Made by a program: the position numbers and the translations under genes. A stretch of 63,810 nucleotides of DNA, filler included, from Octopus bimaculoides (taxonomy: Eukaryota): NCBI RefSeq assembly GCF_001194135.2. It is 8 parts of 7 records of this genome, joined end to end, with 100 filler letters (N's around TTAATTAATTAA, not from the genome) between each part and the next. Parts side by side here need not be neighbours in the genome. Positions count along the whole stretch, not along the records: positions 11,345 to 25,445 come from NC_068985.1; 7 more parts are not named here. One strand, 5' to 3'. Shown one piece after another: positions 15,367 through 23,570 of this stretch (within the stretch, counting starts at the first letter, position 1; each line of letters begins with the position of its first letter). The notes below the pieces were generated by a model, which saw nothing but the letters and a program-made list of their open reading frames with translations, ran no database searches and had not been told where the DNA came from.

Positions 15367-15640
15367 TATGTTTTTGCAGTCATTTTCGTTCGTTTGTCAT
15401 TCAATTTGATAATCGGGTCATTCAAAGTCGCGAAAAAATTAGCGCCATGAAGTTAGTCATTCAAATTCGTTTTTTGATCATTCAATTTCGCACTTCACTC
15501 AAAGAATTTAGCATTTTTATCATTCAAATTAAAATACGCGTCGAGAGCCTTCAAATTAGTCCGAATATGAGGTAGCGCCTTTTCGAGCATTCGAATTTGC
15601 ACGTGAGCATTCGAGTTCGGAATAAGTCATTCAATTTAGA
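15367..15640 (+). repeat. Left long inverted repeat with about 10 CATTCAA(A/T)TT-like motifs
   Basis: Outer ~125 bp nearly identical to the reverse complement of 23445-23570; motifs start at 15398, 15419, 15458, 15479, 15496, 15521, 15548, 15588, 15608, 15628. Confidence 0.9.
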
Positions 15641-15805
15641 ACAAATTTTACGTGTCTTTTTACTCACATTCTAAGAAGTGAATGTTAAAAATGGCAAATT
15701 TAAATAACATTTTGTCGTGCAAATTTTATTATGTTGTTATAGCTACAAGGAAGAAATAAATTACGTGACTCTCCGGTCTACGAAAGTTTTTTCCACTGCA
15801 ACATT

Positions 15806-18800
15806 GTGTTCTTTGGTCTGTACTTACTTGACAGTTTATTTGGAGGTGAGCGTTTTTGTTGATTTTTGAATTGTTTGGTTCTTGTTGAAGTGTTGATAGT
15901 ATTGTTAATCGTTTGTTAAACAATTATTGTTTTTCTCCGCGAGCGGAGAAAAGCAATAAGGCGAGCGGAGAAAAGCAGAGCGTTGATGAAAGGAGGTGCT
16001 TGAGTGAGGAGGAGGTTGAAAAGAATTGTGTAAAAAAAATTATACTAGATTCAGACGAGGAGAGAGTGAGAAAAATGCCGGCTACTACAAGGAAAAACAT
16101 TGATACACCAAGTTTAATGACGAAAGAGAAAGAAGAGAAAAAGCTAGACTTTGCCGCAGTGGCAGGGGCTCATGTTAGAAAGATTCATTTGGCTAATGTG
16201 GAGAAACACAAACAAATGTTGACAAAGGAGGGGCACGGAATTACAGCGACCCCTCCAAAAAGTATTCTCGAAGATATATAGACAAAAACCATAATATATA
16301 AGACCAACAAGGTAAAAAAAAAAAATAAGAGAATTGATTATGTGTTAGAGGCAGAGATTGAGAAGTGTCTCAGGCCTATTTAGCATAAGATAAAGTACCT
16401 AGCAAGAGGTAGAAGGTACGCGACGGTAGAGGTGAGGATGGAGTCGGAGGAAGAAGCCCGACTCCATTTAGTGGAACCCCTAAGAACGGAAGATGTGGTA
16501 CTTATGCCCATATATATGGGTAGAAGGACGTCGAAGATTACAATCAGCAATATTCCCCCTGAGGTGAACCCAGAGTGGTTCGTCGCGGCAGTGACGATGG
16601 GATTGGAAGATAAAATATCAGTCCTGCACGCTGCCGTGATGGAGCCAAGAAATTGGCATGGACAGAGTATGCGTATTATAATTCAAGCCGAACAGACCAC
16701 ACCGGAGGAAATTATTGAGACCTTCGAGGTTGGTGAGACCCGTCTGGTGGTGACAGTAGGGAGTCGCCAACCTCAATGCTTACAATGTGGCAAGAAGGAC
16801 CATCTCAGGGTAGATTGAAAGCCCAAGGAGGCTGAAAAGAAGAAAGAAGAAACAGAGGTGGTAGAAACTGAACCAGCGACGCCGGAGTAGAAGACACACC
16901 AATATCAGCAGAAAGAACACCAATACCAGAAAGAAAAATAGGGGAGGGATGCAGAACAAGAGAAAAATGAAACCACCCTCCCCTAAAAAAGACAAAGAGA
17001 AAACAGAGACGAGGTGGATTAAGAAGCCGAGAAAGCCTGAAAAGAAAAAAAGAAGACAGTTGCTATATGGCAGTTCGAATCTCGAATAGAAATCTAGTGA
17101 ACCACCTAGCAACTGTCTCTGCAGAAAAAAAATTGAGGAAGTAGAGAGTCAGAAGGAAGGGATTGAAATTTACAAAACAAATTGGAAGACTTATAATATT
17201 TTTGCTAATGACTTTCGTAAAGATGTTGGCCCTCCCAGGTTGGACTTTAACCCAGAAATGTATGAGGGCCTCATCACTCCGACACTACGAGCCCCGGAAA
17301 GAGAAGAGGTGGGTTCTCCTCGTCTCAAGACACCGACTAAAGAGGTAAGACTTTATGGCTGCTCGCGTAGGTTGTTTAAATGTGCGTGGCCTGACGTTGA
17401 GCTGGAAACATTTCCTAAATGACGTCAGGTCACAATGTTTAGATGTTATTGTTGCTACTGAAACTTGGTTAAAAGGGCCTAGGGATCTGCTCCCGCTCCT
17501 GAAAGACTACGAGGAATTCATTTCTCCAGGCCGGCCGAGGGGCGGGGTGGGGTGTTGGTCCTACTTAAAAGAAACCGAGTTTCAGAGAAAAAGTTAATTT
17601 TTTTTTTGATCCAGAAGGTAGGCTGGTCGTCTTAGACCTGACGTTCAGTTGTGGTAAGGAAATCAGGCTGGTCGCGGTTTATGCACCTAATTCGAGTCAG
17701 ACTGATTATTACCGAGAGTTGGAGAAATTTCTAGGCACATCACGTAGGAGACTTTAACGCTATTCTCGATGCACGCGTGGATAGTGTTGGCTCAAATTCT
17801 AATAGGAGACCTAACAGTGACTTCCGAGATCAACTAAGTCGCTTTCAGCTAGTAGATCTCTATAGATTAGAATTCCTGGCCGCTCCATTGTGGACATGGT
17901 CAAATAGCGACGGGTTTTCGAGGTTTTACATAGATAGGATTTTTATTAGAAAATTAGACAAAGATATAGTTACGTGTCCACAATATCACATGGTCAGTTA
18001 CAGTGACCATAAGAAGGTCACTTGTAAGCTGTACCTAGATAAGCTATGTAGAAAAGGTTCCGGCTACTGGAAACTCAATAAGTCCCTTTTGGCGATTGAG
18101 GAGTACAGGAGCCGGATTAAGTTATTAATACAGAGGGCGTTGACCGGTTCCTTTATTAACAACAAATGGTGGTACGCCCTCAAAAGAGACATTAAATTCG
18201 AGTCTATTAGATATAGTATAGGTTTAGTGGCTAGAAGGCGTAGGAAGAAAACAGGAATAGTTAGGGCCCTAGAGGAAGCTACGAGGACTGGCGACGCATC
18301 CCAGGTGAAGGTGAAGCGACTGGAGTTAAACCAGGACCTCGAAGCCAAACACATGAGGTGTATCGTCAGAGCTAGATTTCGTGCAATGGGGAGTGAGGGA
18401 ATCAACGCTGGATAGGCACGTGTTGTGGAAACTCAACGTGGAAATGATTTCATAATTTGATCTTTGGTGAATTCGCAAGGTGAGTTGATAAACGAACCCG
18501 AGATGTGTCGGACCTTTCAGGGGCACTTCGCCCAGCTTTTCGGGGGAAGCGATAGACCGGATAGTAGGACGGACTTTACGGACTTTCTCGCCGGGTTGCC
18601 GCGCCTCTCGGGGCGGAGAGCTGTGAAGGGTCGGTCACACCTGAGTAAGTGATTGGTGCCATAGCAGACTGCGGCGGTAGTAAGGCGCCGAGACTCGGTC
18701 TACCGTACGAGCTACATAAAAGTATGCCAGACTTGTTCGGGTACGTACTGGCTAGCGTTTACAGAATGGGTTAATTCCCAGAGCTGTGTGCCAGGGAGTT

Positions 18801-22262: not shown

Positions 22263-23061
22263 CCGTAAATCCTCGAGTATAGTCCGCCCTTGAGTATAAT
22301 ACACAGGGGACTTTTAGGGGGCTGTTCCTTTGAAAAACCTAAACCTTGTGTGTAGTACGCACCCCTTCTCTAACTTGAGTCAAGGAGGTCTATATAACGT
22401 CCTTGGTTTGTAAACATATATACGGTAACGTCCTTTATTATTATTGTATATATAACATAATGCAAACGTGTAGCTTTTTTGTGCACTTTGTTTGCAGAAA
22501 ATAATGAAATAGCAGTAATAACGTCAGTGAAAAATAAATATTAAGTAAATTGCCTTTCACATATTTATCACTATCAGTTACAAAAGCAAAAGCAAAAACA
22601 TTTATTCATATCCTTCAAATTCAACGTCACTTTCAGCATCAAATAACTTCCATTTGTTCCTGCGTAAACATGTCAACATCATTGTAGTGTAAATCTCCGT
22701 CATCGTCAGATTCATAGTCAACATCAGAAGATTCACTTTCATTTATTTCATCTTTCCATACAATGTCATCCTGAGTACCATCCAGTGCAGACGATATACA
22801 ACACTTTTATTTTAATAAATGTTGCTTACTGCAAGTTATGGATGATTCTTTTATGACTTCATTGCTTTCAGGCTTAGCTTAAGGTATTTACGCGCCCGAC
22901 ATCACAAAATGCGTCTGAATAAACATTGCTGGACAGCAAATAGAGACTCGGACATTGCTTAGAAATTATTTTTCATTTTTAACCTCGTATATAGTACGCA
23001 CTAGGAATTTTGACCTTTAAATTTTGAGAAAAAAATGCGGATTATACTCGAGGATTTACGG
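22263..23061 (-). mobile_element. pogo/Tigger-type internally deleted element (799 bp) with TA TSD
   Basis: TIRs CCGTAAATCCTCGAGTATA(G/A)TCCGC at both ends, TA at 22261-62 and 23062-63; minus-strand KCCISSALDGTQDDIVW pogo C-terminal motif. Confidence 0.9.
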
Positions 23062-23299
23062 TATTCAAAATCAAAGAAAAGGAGCAGTTGTTGTAATTGT
23101 GAGTTTCTTCAAAAAGATTGAAAAGACTGGAATGCAATTTCATGAAGTCTTTAGCAATAAATACATGTACCTATGCAAAAATAAAAGAATACATAGAAAA
23201 GAGTTGGACACAATAGAGTGCTTAAAGTATAAACAATGAATGAAAACACATGATTATGATAATGATCATGAGATAAAATCAAAACAGCTATCGTGCTAA

Positions 23300-23570
23300 T
23301 TTGAATTTACGAAGTGTTAAACAGATTGCTCTGAAATGAATTTAAATACTCGAAAAGACGTTTCCTCGCATTCCTACTAATTTGAATGCACTCGACAGGT
23401 ATTTTAATTTGAACGGTGTAAATGTTAAACTCTTTCACCGAAGTGCGAAATTGAATGATCAAAAAACGAATTTGAATGACCAACTTCATGGCGCTAATTT
23501 TTTTCGCGACTTTGAATGACCCGATTATCAAATTGAATGACAAACGTACGAAAATGATTGCAAAAACCTA
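23300..23570 (-). repeat. Right long inverted repeat, partner of 15367-15640
   Basis: Reverse-complement match; outer part near identical, inner part more diverged. Confidence 0.9.

What the first reader, a model, noticed from the sequence alone, without database searches (positions are those of the whole stretch)
15367..23570. Reconstructable ~2.2-kb IS630/Tc1-like transposon with foldback-like TIRs, hidden by two nested insertions
Seen: ~270-bp inverted repeats 8.2 kb apart with TA flanks; removing the Tx1 (5159 bp with one TSD) and the pogo MITE (801 bp) leaves 2244 bp with one DDE transposase and no other visible TIRs. Each arm holds about 10 CATTCAA-like motifs, many spaced 20-21 bp or about twice that. 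Known: long-TIR Tc1 elements usually have 2-3 direct repeats per arm; arrays of many motifs are more typical of foldback-type elements. Inference: a possibly unclassified ITm family with helically phased transposase-binding arrays. The two outer flanks weakly resemble one interrupted family B SINE, which would support a single insertion.
Basis: partly seen in the sequence, partly recalled or inferred. Interest (0 to 1): 0.7.

Follow-up and report, generated by a model that had tools for sequence, protein, structure and literature searches.

The report
Dead nested IS630-like transposon, phased repeat arms
A dead 2.2-kb cut-and-paste transposon, split by two later insertions, belongs to a widespread marine-animal family whose long end-repeats carry about ten copies of a short motif spaced every 21 bases, which is unusual for this transposon group but is not a new kind of element.

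Summary
Window 15367-23570 is one IS630/Tc1/mariner (ITm) transposon flanked by TA duplications. A 5.1-kb LINE interrupts its 5' UTR and a 799-bp TA-flanked MITE interrupts its 3' UTR. Removing both leaves 2243 bp.

The assembly gap lies inside the LINE. Both sides align collinearly to one cephalopod LINE protein, with about 143 residues missing, and the LINE's 24-25-nt target duplication spans the gap.

The window transposase is dead: start codon lost, three stops, at least three frameshifts, first catalytic D changed to A. Intact 350-370-aa relatives exist in sea urchins, a brittle star, a sea star, hagfish and cnidarians.

In eight independent full-length elements elsewhere, the same gene sits between the same kind of long arms with TA flanks. 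This links arms and transposase.

Each arm carries 5-12 copies of TCATTCAAATTCG, all in one orientation, on a 21.0-bp lattice. Lattice positions (14, 35, 56, 97, 117, 159, 180) are conserved across species while the spacers are not.

The protein is IS630-like with a DD30-33E signature, and its fold matches Mos1, SETMAR and Sleeping Beauty. Motif binding by the transposase is inferred, not shown. Whether Repbase or Dfam already holds the family could not be checked.

The parts
15365..15366 (.). Left TA target-site duplication
   Evidence: Sequence read. All homologous elements show TA immediately outside TAGG.
15367..15642 (+). Left terminal inverted-repeat arm (~276 bp). It holds 10 inward-pointing TCATTCAAATTCG-like motifs at 14, 35, 56, 95, 116, 158, 185, 225, 245, 265 nt from the end.
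   Evidence: Homologous to the Diadema arm at 70% identity over 170 nt.
15643..15804 (+). 5' untranslated region, part A. Its last 25 nt (15780-15804) are one copy of the LINE's target-site duplication.
   Evidence: (family D17). Arm-to-ORF distance after excision is ~220 bp, against ~210 bp in Diadema.
15805..20940 (+). Nested LINE of the L1/Tx1 type: decayed ORF1, an APE endonuclease domain, a reverse transcriptase, a C-terminal Cys/His motif region and a short A-rich tail. It contains the assembly gap 19413-19900.
   Evidence: Pfam RVT_1 at 1.8e-25 and a weak Exo_endo_phos match. Best relatives are cephalopod LINE proteins carrying RVT_1 plus zf-RVT. Collinear across the gap.
20941..20964 (+). 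Second copy of the LINE's target-site duplication
   Evidence: 19 of 21 positions identical in the core and 24-25 nt overall.
20965..21024 (+). 5' untranslated region, part B
21025..22103 (+). Transposase pseudogene (IS630-like DDE). The start codon is ATG>CTG. There are three in-frame stops and at least three frameshifts (~21100, ~21590, ~21700). The first catalytic Asp is replaced by Ala (FIAE); the second Asp (YDNAQ) and the Glu (NCTEMAHS) are kept.
   Evidence: 59-63% identity to the intact 363-aa Diadema protein over residues 28-363.
22119..22158 (+). Perfect 2 x 20-nt tandem duplication just after the ORF
   Evidence: family D16.
22263..23061 (.). Nested 799-bp non-coding MITE with 25-nt inverted ends and TA duplications at 22261-22262 and 23062-23063
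23295..23570 (-). Right terminal inverted-repeat arm (~276 bp). It holds 9 inward-pointing motifs at 14, 35, 56, 96, 117, 159, 186, 226, 267 nt from the end.
23571..23572 (.). Right TA target-site duplication

Best explanation
[quoted passage not shown] It inserted at a TA. Later a LINE landed in its 5' UTR and a TA-targeting MITE landed in its 3' UTR.

The family is widespread in echinoderms, cnidarians, hagfish and the window's unidentified host. Its members encode a transposase of about 360 aa with an N-terminal paired-like double helix-turn-helix and an RNase-H-fold DDE domain. The signature is DD33E in the sea-urchin clade and DD30-32E in relatives.

Each arm has a conserved ~21-nt terminus (TAGGTTTTCCCGGnCAATTTC) followed by 5-12 same-orientation copies of a ~13-nt motif (TCATTCAAATTCG). 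The copies sit on a 21-bp lattice, which is two helical turns.

Inferred mechanism:
- The paired-like domain binds each motif, so several transposase molecules line up on one face of each arm.
- This loaded array helps find, pair and order the two ends before cleavage next to the flanking TA. It would be an expanded form of the IR/DR arrangement of Sleeping Beauty-type elements.

What is shown: element identity, boundaries, nesting order, family membership, the motif lattice and its conservation.

What is inferred: that the motifs are transposase-binding sites, and what the phasing is for.
For: Anatomy in the window.

Continuity across the gap: plus the LINE target duplication that spans it.

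Arms linked to the transposase:
- Intact genes lie between homologous arms with TA flanks in Diadema (2262 bp), S. purpuratus (2199 bp), Amphiura (2270 bp), three ENA contigs (2371-2756 bp), metagenome locus L026, ENA locus L007 (2087 bp; 442-nt arms, 98-100% identical) and Nematostella (1889 bp). Sources.
- The reconstructed window length of 2243 bp and the arm-to-ORF distances match these elements.

Motif arrays:
- Arms hold 5-12 motifs per 330 nt. Interiors of about 1.6 kb hold 0-2 on both strands combined, except one locus with 8. Antisense hits in the arms number 0-1.
- Over 27 arms the best period is 21.0 bp (resultant 0.78). Of 195 adjacent spacings, 166 fall in 20-22, 40-43, 60-64 or 81-84 nt.
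- The same lattice slots are occupied across species, and the slot near 77 is almost always empty.
- Motif islands are conserved while spacers carry about zero information.

Protein:
- Pfam gives DDE_3 plus HTH_32/23/29.
- NCBIfam IS630 family model NF033545 scores 97-126 bits against a cut-off of 100.
- D161, D247 and E281 are invariant in 14 sequences.
- A family profile hits Mos1 (6.7e-7), SETMAR, the Sleeping Beauty PAI subdomain (1.4e-3) and Pax6.
- An AlphaFold model (pLDDT 79) matches Mos1 (3e-8), SETMAR and the Sleeping Beauty catalytic domain (TM 0.6-0.7), and the Pax5/6 paired domain.
Against: - No binding or transposition experiment exists for this family. Motif function rests on conservation and on analogy with other elements.
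- The position weight matrix was trained on the same arms it was used to count. The controls are the interior sequence, the antisense strand, exact-word counts and arms recovered independently from metagenomes.
- Periodicity could partly be a legacy of tandem duplication of a ~21-bp unit.
- The two arms of one element are not independent samples, and some metagenome arms may come from one species.
- The window copy's host is unknown. No second copy from that genome could be examined, and no empty site was found.
Confidence: 0.85

Rival explanations
1. The arms are only internally repetitive DNA. A ~21-bp unit was amplified by slippage or unequal exchange, as in Foldback or Galileo arms. Only the terminal ~20-30 nt is functional, and the 21-bp period is a by-product of duplication rather than selected phasing.
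For: Motif number per arm varies from 5 to 12 between copies and between the two arms of one element. The inner halves of the arms are much less alike than the outer halves. Tandem duplication produces periodicity without any selection.
Against: Motif cores are conserved while the spacers between them carry about zero information, across elements whose proteins are only 55-70% identical. The same slots are filled across species, the slot near 77 is almost always empty, and a 26-27-nt step recurs near positions 160-206. This is not the pattern of recent homogenising duplication. Orientation is uniform. A clade at only ~38-48% protein identity has different arm sequence but again carries CATTCA/TCATT-type motifs at 13-15, 34-36, 97 and 117.
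Confidence: 0.2
2. The 8.2-kb structure is an assembly chimera. The left arm plus LINE 5' half and the LINE 3' half plus transposase and right arm come from two different loci joined at the gap.
For: An estimated-length gap (19413-19900) lies between the two halves. Both the LINE and the transposon are repeated families, which are the usual sites of mis-joins.
Against: The two LINE halves are on the same strand and are collinear, without overlap, on one homologous protein. The missing ~430 nt is close to the 488 N. The 24-25-nt target duplication of the LINE is found once on each side of the gap. After excision, the length and the arm-to-ORF distances match intact relatives.
Confidence: 0.04
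3. The motif arrays work mainly as something other than assembly sites. They could act as a transposase sink that damps activity (overproduction inhibition), as the element's promoter or enhancer, or as a source of hairpin RNA from the inverted arms that silences the element.
For: The arrays fill nearly the whole untranslated left end upstream of the ORF. Promoters of Tc1-type elements lie in that region, as studied for Bari (PMC5570127). Many binding sites per element would titrate the protein.
Against: Both arms carry the arrays in mirror symmetry, including the 3' arm, where a promoter is not needed. Internal-deletion derivatives that have lost the gene keep both arrays (L054 at 1315 bp, L086 at 1373 bp). 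That fits a cis requirement for mobility.
Confidence: 0.15

Closest known systems
Bacterial IS630 family insertion sequences (NCBIfam NF033545)
   Same: This is the best-scoring curated protein family: 97-126 bits against a cut-off of 100. It shares the TA target, the HTH_32/HTH_23/HTH_29-type N-terminus, the DDE_3 catalytic domain and a D-to-E spacing in the low 30s. A cyanobacterial IS630 transposase scores 114 bits against the family profile, compared with 32 bits for Mos1.
   Different: These elements are eukaryotic and sit in chromosome-scale animal assemblies; one lies inside an intron of a prominin gene. They measure 1.9-2.8 kb with 270-440-nt arms that carry many motifs. IS630 is 1.15 kb with 20-nt ends (PMC11544213).
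IR/DR-type Tc1 elements (Sleeping Beauty, Minos, Paris, S, Bari3, Tc3)
   Same: They share the TA target, a paired-like DNA-binding domain, a DDE catalytic domain and long arms of 200-460 nt. In those elements the transposase binds direct repeats inside each arm, and this ordered binding enforces synapsis before cleavage (PMC5224488; Bari in PMC4120734 and PMC8834629).
   Different: Those elements have 2-3 direct repeats per arm and a DD34E signature. Here there are 5-12 motifs on a 21-bp lattice, the signature is DD30-33E, and no Tc1-specific Pfam N-terminal domain is detected.
mariner (Mos1, Hsmar1/SETMAR)
   Same: These are the closest solved structures. The target is TA. The terminus TAGGTT... 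resembles mariner ends; that resemblance is from my own memory and was not tested.
   Different: mariner has D as its third catalytic residue (DD34D) and ~28-30-nt ends with a single binding site. The Pfam Transposase_1 model does not match.
Galileo (P superfamily) and Foldback elements
   Same: Long, internally repetitive inverted arms with multiple transposase-binding sites (Galileo THAP sites, PMC3688188; PMC3573991).
   Different: The transposase superfamily and the target duplication differ. Their arms are much longer and make up most of the element. Here each arm is about 12% of a 2.2-kb element with an ordinary central gene.
hAT, CACTA and Tn7/Mu-type ends with several subterminal binding sites
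   Same: The general principle is the same: many short transposase-binding motifs within the terminal few hundred nucleotides (own knowledge; Herves example in PMC3143072).
   Different: The transposases and target duplications are unrelated, and the motifs in those elements are not on a strict two-turn lattice.

Membership tests
IS630/Tc1/mariner (ITm) group | TA target-site duplication | tested here: met
   TA lies at 15365-6 and 23571-2. TA lies directly outside both ends in L001-L007, L026 and L126. In L007 and Nematostella the bases beyond TA differ between the two flanks, so the duplication is TA and not longer.
IS630/Tc1/mariner (ITm) group | DDE/D catalytic triad in an RNase-H-like fold | tested here: met
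   D161, D247 and E281 are invariant in 14 family proteins. Foldseek matches Mos1, SETMAR and the Sleeping Beauty catalytic domain. In the window copy itself the first D is mutated to A.
IS630/Tc1/mariner (ITm) group | N-terminal bipartite (paired-like) helix-turn-helix DNA-binding domain | tested here: met
   Pfam HTH_32, HTH_23 and HTH_29. The family profile hits the Sleeping Beauty PAI subdomain at 1.4e-3 and Pax6 at 0.09. The model has two three-helix bundles (residues 12-53 and 71-117) and matches Pax5/6.
IS630/Tc1/mariner (ITm) group | Terminal inverted repeats flanking a single transposase gene | tested here: met
Tc1 family (DD34E) | [quoted passage not shown] | tested here: not met
   The spacing is 33 in the Diadema, S. 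purpuratus and window clade, and 30-32 in the other aligned members.
mariner family (DD34D) | Third catalytic residue is Asp; match to Pfam Transposase_1 | tested here: not met
   The third residue is an invariant Glu. No Transposase_1 match was found.
Bacterial IS630 family (NCBIfam NF033545, equivalog) | Whole-protein score at or above the curated cut-off of 100 bits | tested here: inconclusive
   Scores are 96.8 (Diadema), 112 (Amphiura), 111 (Montipora) and 126 (P0050). Three of four pass, but the model is meant for prokaryotic elements with short ends.
IR/DR subgroup of Tc1-like elements | Long arms of 200-250 nt with two (Bari: three) transposase-binding direct repeats per arm | tested here: not met
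   The long arms are present, but each holds 5-12 motifs. Binding itself was not tested.
Foldback / Galileo-type elements | Very long internally repetitive arms making up most of the element; non-TA target duplication; P-type or FB-type transposase | tested here: not met
   Arms are ~276 nt of 2243 nt. The duplication is TA. The transposase is ITm-type.
Tx1 clade of LINEs (the nested insert) | Reverse-transcriptase phylogeny placing it with Tx1; sequence-specific insertion | not testable with these tools
   APE, RVT_1 and a C-terminal zinc-binding region are present in the insert or its relatives. The nearest relatives are cephalopod LINEs, with a Xenopus protein at 42% identity. No reference RT set was available, and only one insertion could be seen.
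pogo-derived MITE (the second insert) | TA duplication and ends matching an autonomous pogo/Tigger element | tested here: inconclusive
   The TA duplication and 25-nt inverted ends are confirmed. No autonomous partner was available for comparison.

The most novel reading that the evidence does not exclude
These elements represent an ITm lineage that has not been recognised as such. It would be an animal IS630-like group with a DD30-33E signature, in which the transpososome is built on a helically phased array of up to a dozen transposase-binding sites per end. That would mean a filament-like or wrapped assembly, unlike the one-site mariner ends or the two-site IR/DR ends studied so far. Intact, apparently young copies exist (identical 442-nt arms in L007; intact genes in sea urchins and Nematostella), so the system could be tested directly and perhaps developed as a tool.
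Probability: 0.25. Interest if true: 0.7.

Novelty: new variant of a known kind. Interest (0 to 1): 0.5.

Why it matters
Work on ITm mechanism rests on mariner (one binding site per end) and on Sleeping Beauty/Tc3-type IR/DR ends (two sites per end). The purpose of extra internal sites is still debated.

This family has many sites locked to a two-turn lattice, and that lattice is conserved across phyla. It offers a natural test of whether site number and helical phase control synapsis, fidelity or dosage.

The family also shows that IS630-like transposases, usually treated as the bacterial outgroup, form a large animal lineage. That lineage has a patchy host range (echinoderms, cnidarians, hagfish, this host), which suggests horizontal transfer.

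For the window itself the result is ordinary: a dead, nested transposon with no sign of host function.

Tried and rejected
- Pfam on the stitched window pseudogene gave only a sub-threshold DDE_3 hit. The link to a family came from homologues.
- A single-sequence search of the PDB found nothing. The family profile was needed.
- In the Diadema locus the first inverted repeats found were ~1-kb arrays of a 160-nt satellite, 2.5 kb outside the gene. I briefly took them for giant arms. I rejected that because their sequence is unrelated and the true TA-flanked arms lie inside them.
- The word-indexed search seemed to show a sharp gap between this family and bacterial IS630. The exhaustive search showed a continuum of thousands of relatives, so the gap was a prefilter artefact.
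- Naming ten of those relatives failed: all come from unnamed Logan or ENA assemblies.
- Host identification failed. An exact-protein look-up of a window ORF was not on record, and the Montipora protein has no locus on record. Only the LINE's nearest relatives, which are cephalopod, hint at the host.
- Literature searches found no named family matching this one. I searched for DD29E-DD33E signatures, for IS630-like elements in echinoderms or cnidarians, and for ITm elements with many repeats per arm. One search failed on syntax.
- SINE-flank idea: no tRNA-like sequence and no second copy in the piece. It remains untestable here.
- Of 117 metagenome hits to the terminal pattern, most looked like chance matches. 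Only 32 had at least three motifs in the adjacent arm and were used.

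
Full report
**Scope and gap test**

Only window 11345-25445 is real sequence. The finding contains an assembly gap at 19413-19900. The gap lies inside the nested LINE, not in the arms or the transposase.

- The reverse-transcriptase sequence that ends at 19412 aligns to residues 29-237 of an Argonauta hians LINE protein (58% identity).
- The sequence that starts at 19903 aligns to residues 381-633 of the same protein (45%), on the same strand and without overlap.
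- About 143 codons (~430 nt) are missing, close to the 488 N written for the gap.
- Reading frame across the gap cannot be judged, because the gap length is only estimated and the LINE already carries many stops and frameshifts.
- A 24-25-nt target-site duplication of the LINE is found once on each side of the gap, at 15780-15804 and 20941-20964 (19 of 21 core positions identical; family D17).

I therefore treat the two sides as one locus. A mis-join remains a small residual risk.

**What is in the window**

Arms. Inverted repeats are present as described: 76 nt at 96% and 165 nt at 85% complementarity. A global alignment gives 87% identity over 279 aligned positions. The outer ~128 nt are about 96% identical and similarity fades by ~275 nt.

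Termini. The ends read TA|TATGTTTTTGCAG... and ...TGCAAAAACCTA|TA. Relatives end in TA|TAGG...CCTA|TA.

Inserts.
- The LINE (15805-20940) sits about 60 nt upstream of the transposase start.
- A 799-bp MITE (22263-23061) sits between the ORF and the right arm. It has 25-nt inverted ends and its own TA duplication.

Transposase. The reading frame (21025-22103, + strand) is dead. The start codon is CTG, there are three in-frame stops and at least three frameshifts, and the first catalytic Asp is replaced by Ala.

**Are the arms and the transposase one element?**

The stitched pseudogene finds intact 350-370-aa proteins at up to 59% identity. They occur in Diadema setosum, Strongylocentrotus purpuratus, Lytechinus, Patiria, Amphiura filiformis, the hagfish Eptatretus burgeri, Nematostella, Montipora and Acropora.

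I fetched the DNA around eight of these proteins.

- In every case the single-exon gene lies between long inverted arms with TA flanks, and it has no shorter private inverted repeats.
- The elements are: Diadema 2262 bp; S. purpuratus 2199 bp; Amphiura 2270 bp; three contigs of ERZ26222911 at 2371-2756 bp; a contig of ERZ25071797 at 2087 bp with 442-nt arms that are 98-100% identical; and Nematostella at 1889 bp.
- The Diadema arms are directly homologous to the window's arms, at 70% identity over ~170 nt.
- The window's arm-to-ORF distances after excision (~220 nt on the 5' side, ~390 nt on the 3' side) match Diadema (~210 and ~330 nt).

A scan of metagenome contigs for the conserved terminus added 32 further ends carrying the same motif pattern. 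These include one more intact full-length copy (L026) and two internal-deletion derivatives of 1.3-1.4 kb that keep both arms but have lost the gene (L054, L086). Arms without a transposase therefore do exist. They are ordinary non-autonomous derivatives and do not count against the link.

**The motif arrays**

Counts in the window.
- Exact CATTCAA occurs 13 times against 3.0 +/- 1.6 expected. Eleven of these are in the arms and all point inward.
- A position weight matrix built from the arms has the consensus ATCATTCAAATTCGTA. It finds 10 and 9 sites in the window's arms.

Counts in relatives.
- The relatives' arms hold 5-12 sites each.
- Interiors of ~1.6 kb hold 0-2 sites, with one exception of 8. 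The antisense strand of the arms holds 0-1.
- The matrix was trained on these same arms, so the interiors, the antisense strand, the exact-word count and the independently recovered metagenome arms serve as controls.

Lattice.
- Positions measured from the element end coincide across species without any alignment: 14, 35, 56, 96-98, 117-119, 138, 158-160 and 179-181.
- Over 27 arms the best period is 21.0 bp (resultant 0.78).
- Of 195 adjacent spacings, 90 are 20-22 nt, 55 are 40-43, 13 are 60-64 and 8 are 81-84. Together that is 85%.
- In the window alone the resultant is 0.86, and none of 2000 random placements reached it. The two arms are not independent, so this null is liberal.
- Two details recur across species. 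The slot near position 77 is almost always empty. A 26-27-nt step near positions 160-206 shifts the inner block by about half a helical turn.

Conservation.
- An alignment of 14 arms, and an ungapped information profile of 35 arms that are under 85% identical, both show the same pattern.
- The terminus (TAGGTTTTCCCGGnCAATTTC) is conserved and so are the motif islands. The spacers between them carry almost no information.

Distant clade. In the Nematostella/L007 clade (38-48% protein identity) the arm sequence is different and the terminus is TA|CACCTTTTGCTG. CATTCA/TCATT-type motifs again sit at about 13-15, 34-36, 97 and 117.

It is a property of the family, not an accident of this copy.

**The protein**

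- Pfam finds DDE_3 with HTH_32, HTH_23 and HTH_29. It finds none of the Tc1-, mariner- or pogo-specific domains.
- The NCBIfam model for bacterial IS630 transposases scores 97-126 bits against a cut-off of 100.
- D161, D247 and E281 (Diadema numbering) are invariant in 14 diverse members. The signature is DD33E, and DD30-32E in the other clades.
- A family profile reaches Mos1 (6.7e-7), SETMAR, the Sleeping Beauty PAI subdomain and catalytic domain, and Pax6.
- An AlphaFold model (pLDDT 79) has two N-terminal three-helix bundles and an RNase-H-like core. Its best PDB matches are the Mos1 transpososome structures (3e-8), the SETMAR and Sleeping Beauty catalytic domains (TM 0.6-0.7) and the Pax5/6 paired domains.
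- Membership of the ITm group is met on all four defining features. Membership of Tc1 (DD34E) and of mariner (DD34D) is not.
- In profile score the family is nearer to bacterial IS630 (114 bits for a cyanobacterial protein) than to Mos1 (32 bits).
- An exhaustive search shows the wider group is large: 909 clusters at 50% identity with E <= 1e-30 and 5474 with E <= 1e-10. Most are in unnamed assemblies.

**How it most likely works**

Shown: this is a TA-targeting cut-and-paste element. Its ends consist of a conserved terminus plus a phased array of one motif, and the array is kept in non-autonomous derivatives.

Inferred:
- The paired-like domain binds each ~13-nt motif.
- A 21-bp spacing puts successive proteins on one face of the helix, which would allow cooperative loading.
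- The loaded arms promote ordered pairing of the ends before cleavage at the TA. This extends the role shown for the two-site IR/DR ends of Sleeping Beauty (PMC5224488) and the three repeats of Bari (PMC4120734).

Rivals: periodicity as a mere legacy of tandem duplication; arrays acting as a transposase sink, a promoter or a source of hairpin RNA; and an assembly chimera. The first is weakened by conservation of motifs, slots and orientation against free spacers. The chimera is weakened by the gap test.

**Comparison with what is known, and novelty**

The window copy is an ordinary dead, nested transposon. The family is an ITm member annotated in databases only as 'Tc1-like transposase' or 'uncharacterized'.

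I found no paper naming a DD30-33E animal family or describing ITm ends with many phased motifs. Reviews list Tc1/mariner, pogo, Gambol, Sailor, Zator and TP36 as the superfamilies (PMC8533490) and treat IS630 as a bacterial outgroup (PMC7325037).

I could not query Repbase or Dfam. The sea-urchin and Nematostella repeat libraries there may well contain these elements under generic 'Mariner' names.

I rate it a new variant of a known kind. The new part is the conserved two-turn lattice of many sites. Interest is moderate.

**Host**

The source organism is not identified. The nested LINE's nearest relatives are cephalopod and the transposase's nearest relatives are echinoderm, each at only about 58-59% identity.

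Noticed in passing
L001 823-1750 and 6836-7848 (Diadema setosum OZ188194.1): The intact Diadema element lies inside a much larger inverted structure. Two arrays of about 1 kb, made of a ~160-nt satellite-like unit, face each other about 5 kb apart (up to 372 nt at 85-88% complementarity). Their sequence is unrelated to the transposon's arms.
   Followed up: partly
window 11345-15000 (+ strand): A second, different non-LTR retrotransposon lies upstream. It has a reverse transcriptase with a YMDD motif and a conserved C-terminal domain ending at 14936, and it contains its own assembly gap at 13584-13885. The ITm element inserted about 430 nt downstream of its last ORF, possibly in its 3' UTR.
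   Followed up: no
window 22119-22158: A perfect 2 x 20-nt tandem duplication (ACTTGCCTTATCAAGACTGT) lies directly after the transposase reading frame.
   Followed up: no
P0003 (Eptatretus burgeri), P0195 and P0196 (Lytechinus): The hagfish protein is 71% identical to the Diadema protein, more than Diadema is to S. purpuratus (66%). It also carries a ~65-aa N-terminal extension. Lytechinus has 422-aa and 623-aa versions. The patchy distribution suggests horizontal transfer, and the extensions suggest possible fusions or domestication.
   Followed up: no
Arms of 27 elements, positions ~77 and ~160-206 from the end: The lattice slot near 77 is almost always empty. A 26-27-nt step recurs in mid-arm, for example 158 to 185 in the window and 179 to 206 in Diadema. 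It shifts the inner block of motifs by about half a helical turn.
   Followed up: partly
L008 2501-2908 (IMG/VR GVMAG-S-3300004128-18, 6.2-kb contig): A giant-virus metagenome bin encodes a distant relative of the transposase catalytic domain (29% identity over residues 154-288).
   Followed up: no
L054 1703-3017 and L086 2-1374 (metagenome contigs): Two 1.3-1.4-kb internal-deletion derivatives keep both motif arrays. One retains only the first 51 codons of the transposase and the other retains none.
   Followed up: partly
L007 1432-3518 (ERZ25071797, 1-Mb contig): This copy looks very young. Its 442-nt arms are 98-100% identical, its 353-aa ORF is intact, and its 90%-identity cluster has 116 member sequences. 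It is a candidate active element.
   Followed up: partly
L003 (Amphiura filiformis CM076857.1): The intact element lies inside the called range of a prominin-like gene on the opposite strand, presumably in an intron.
   Followed up: no
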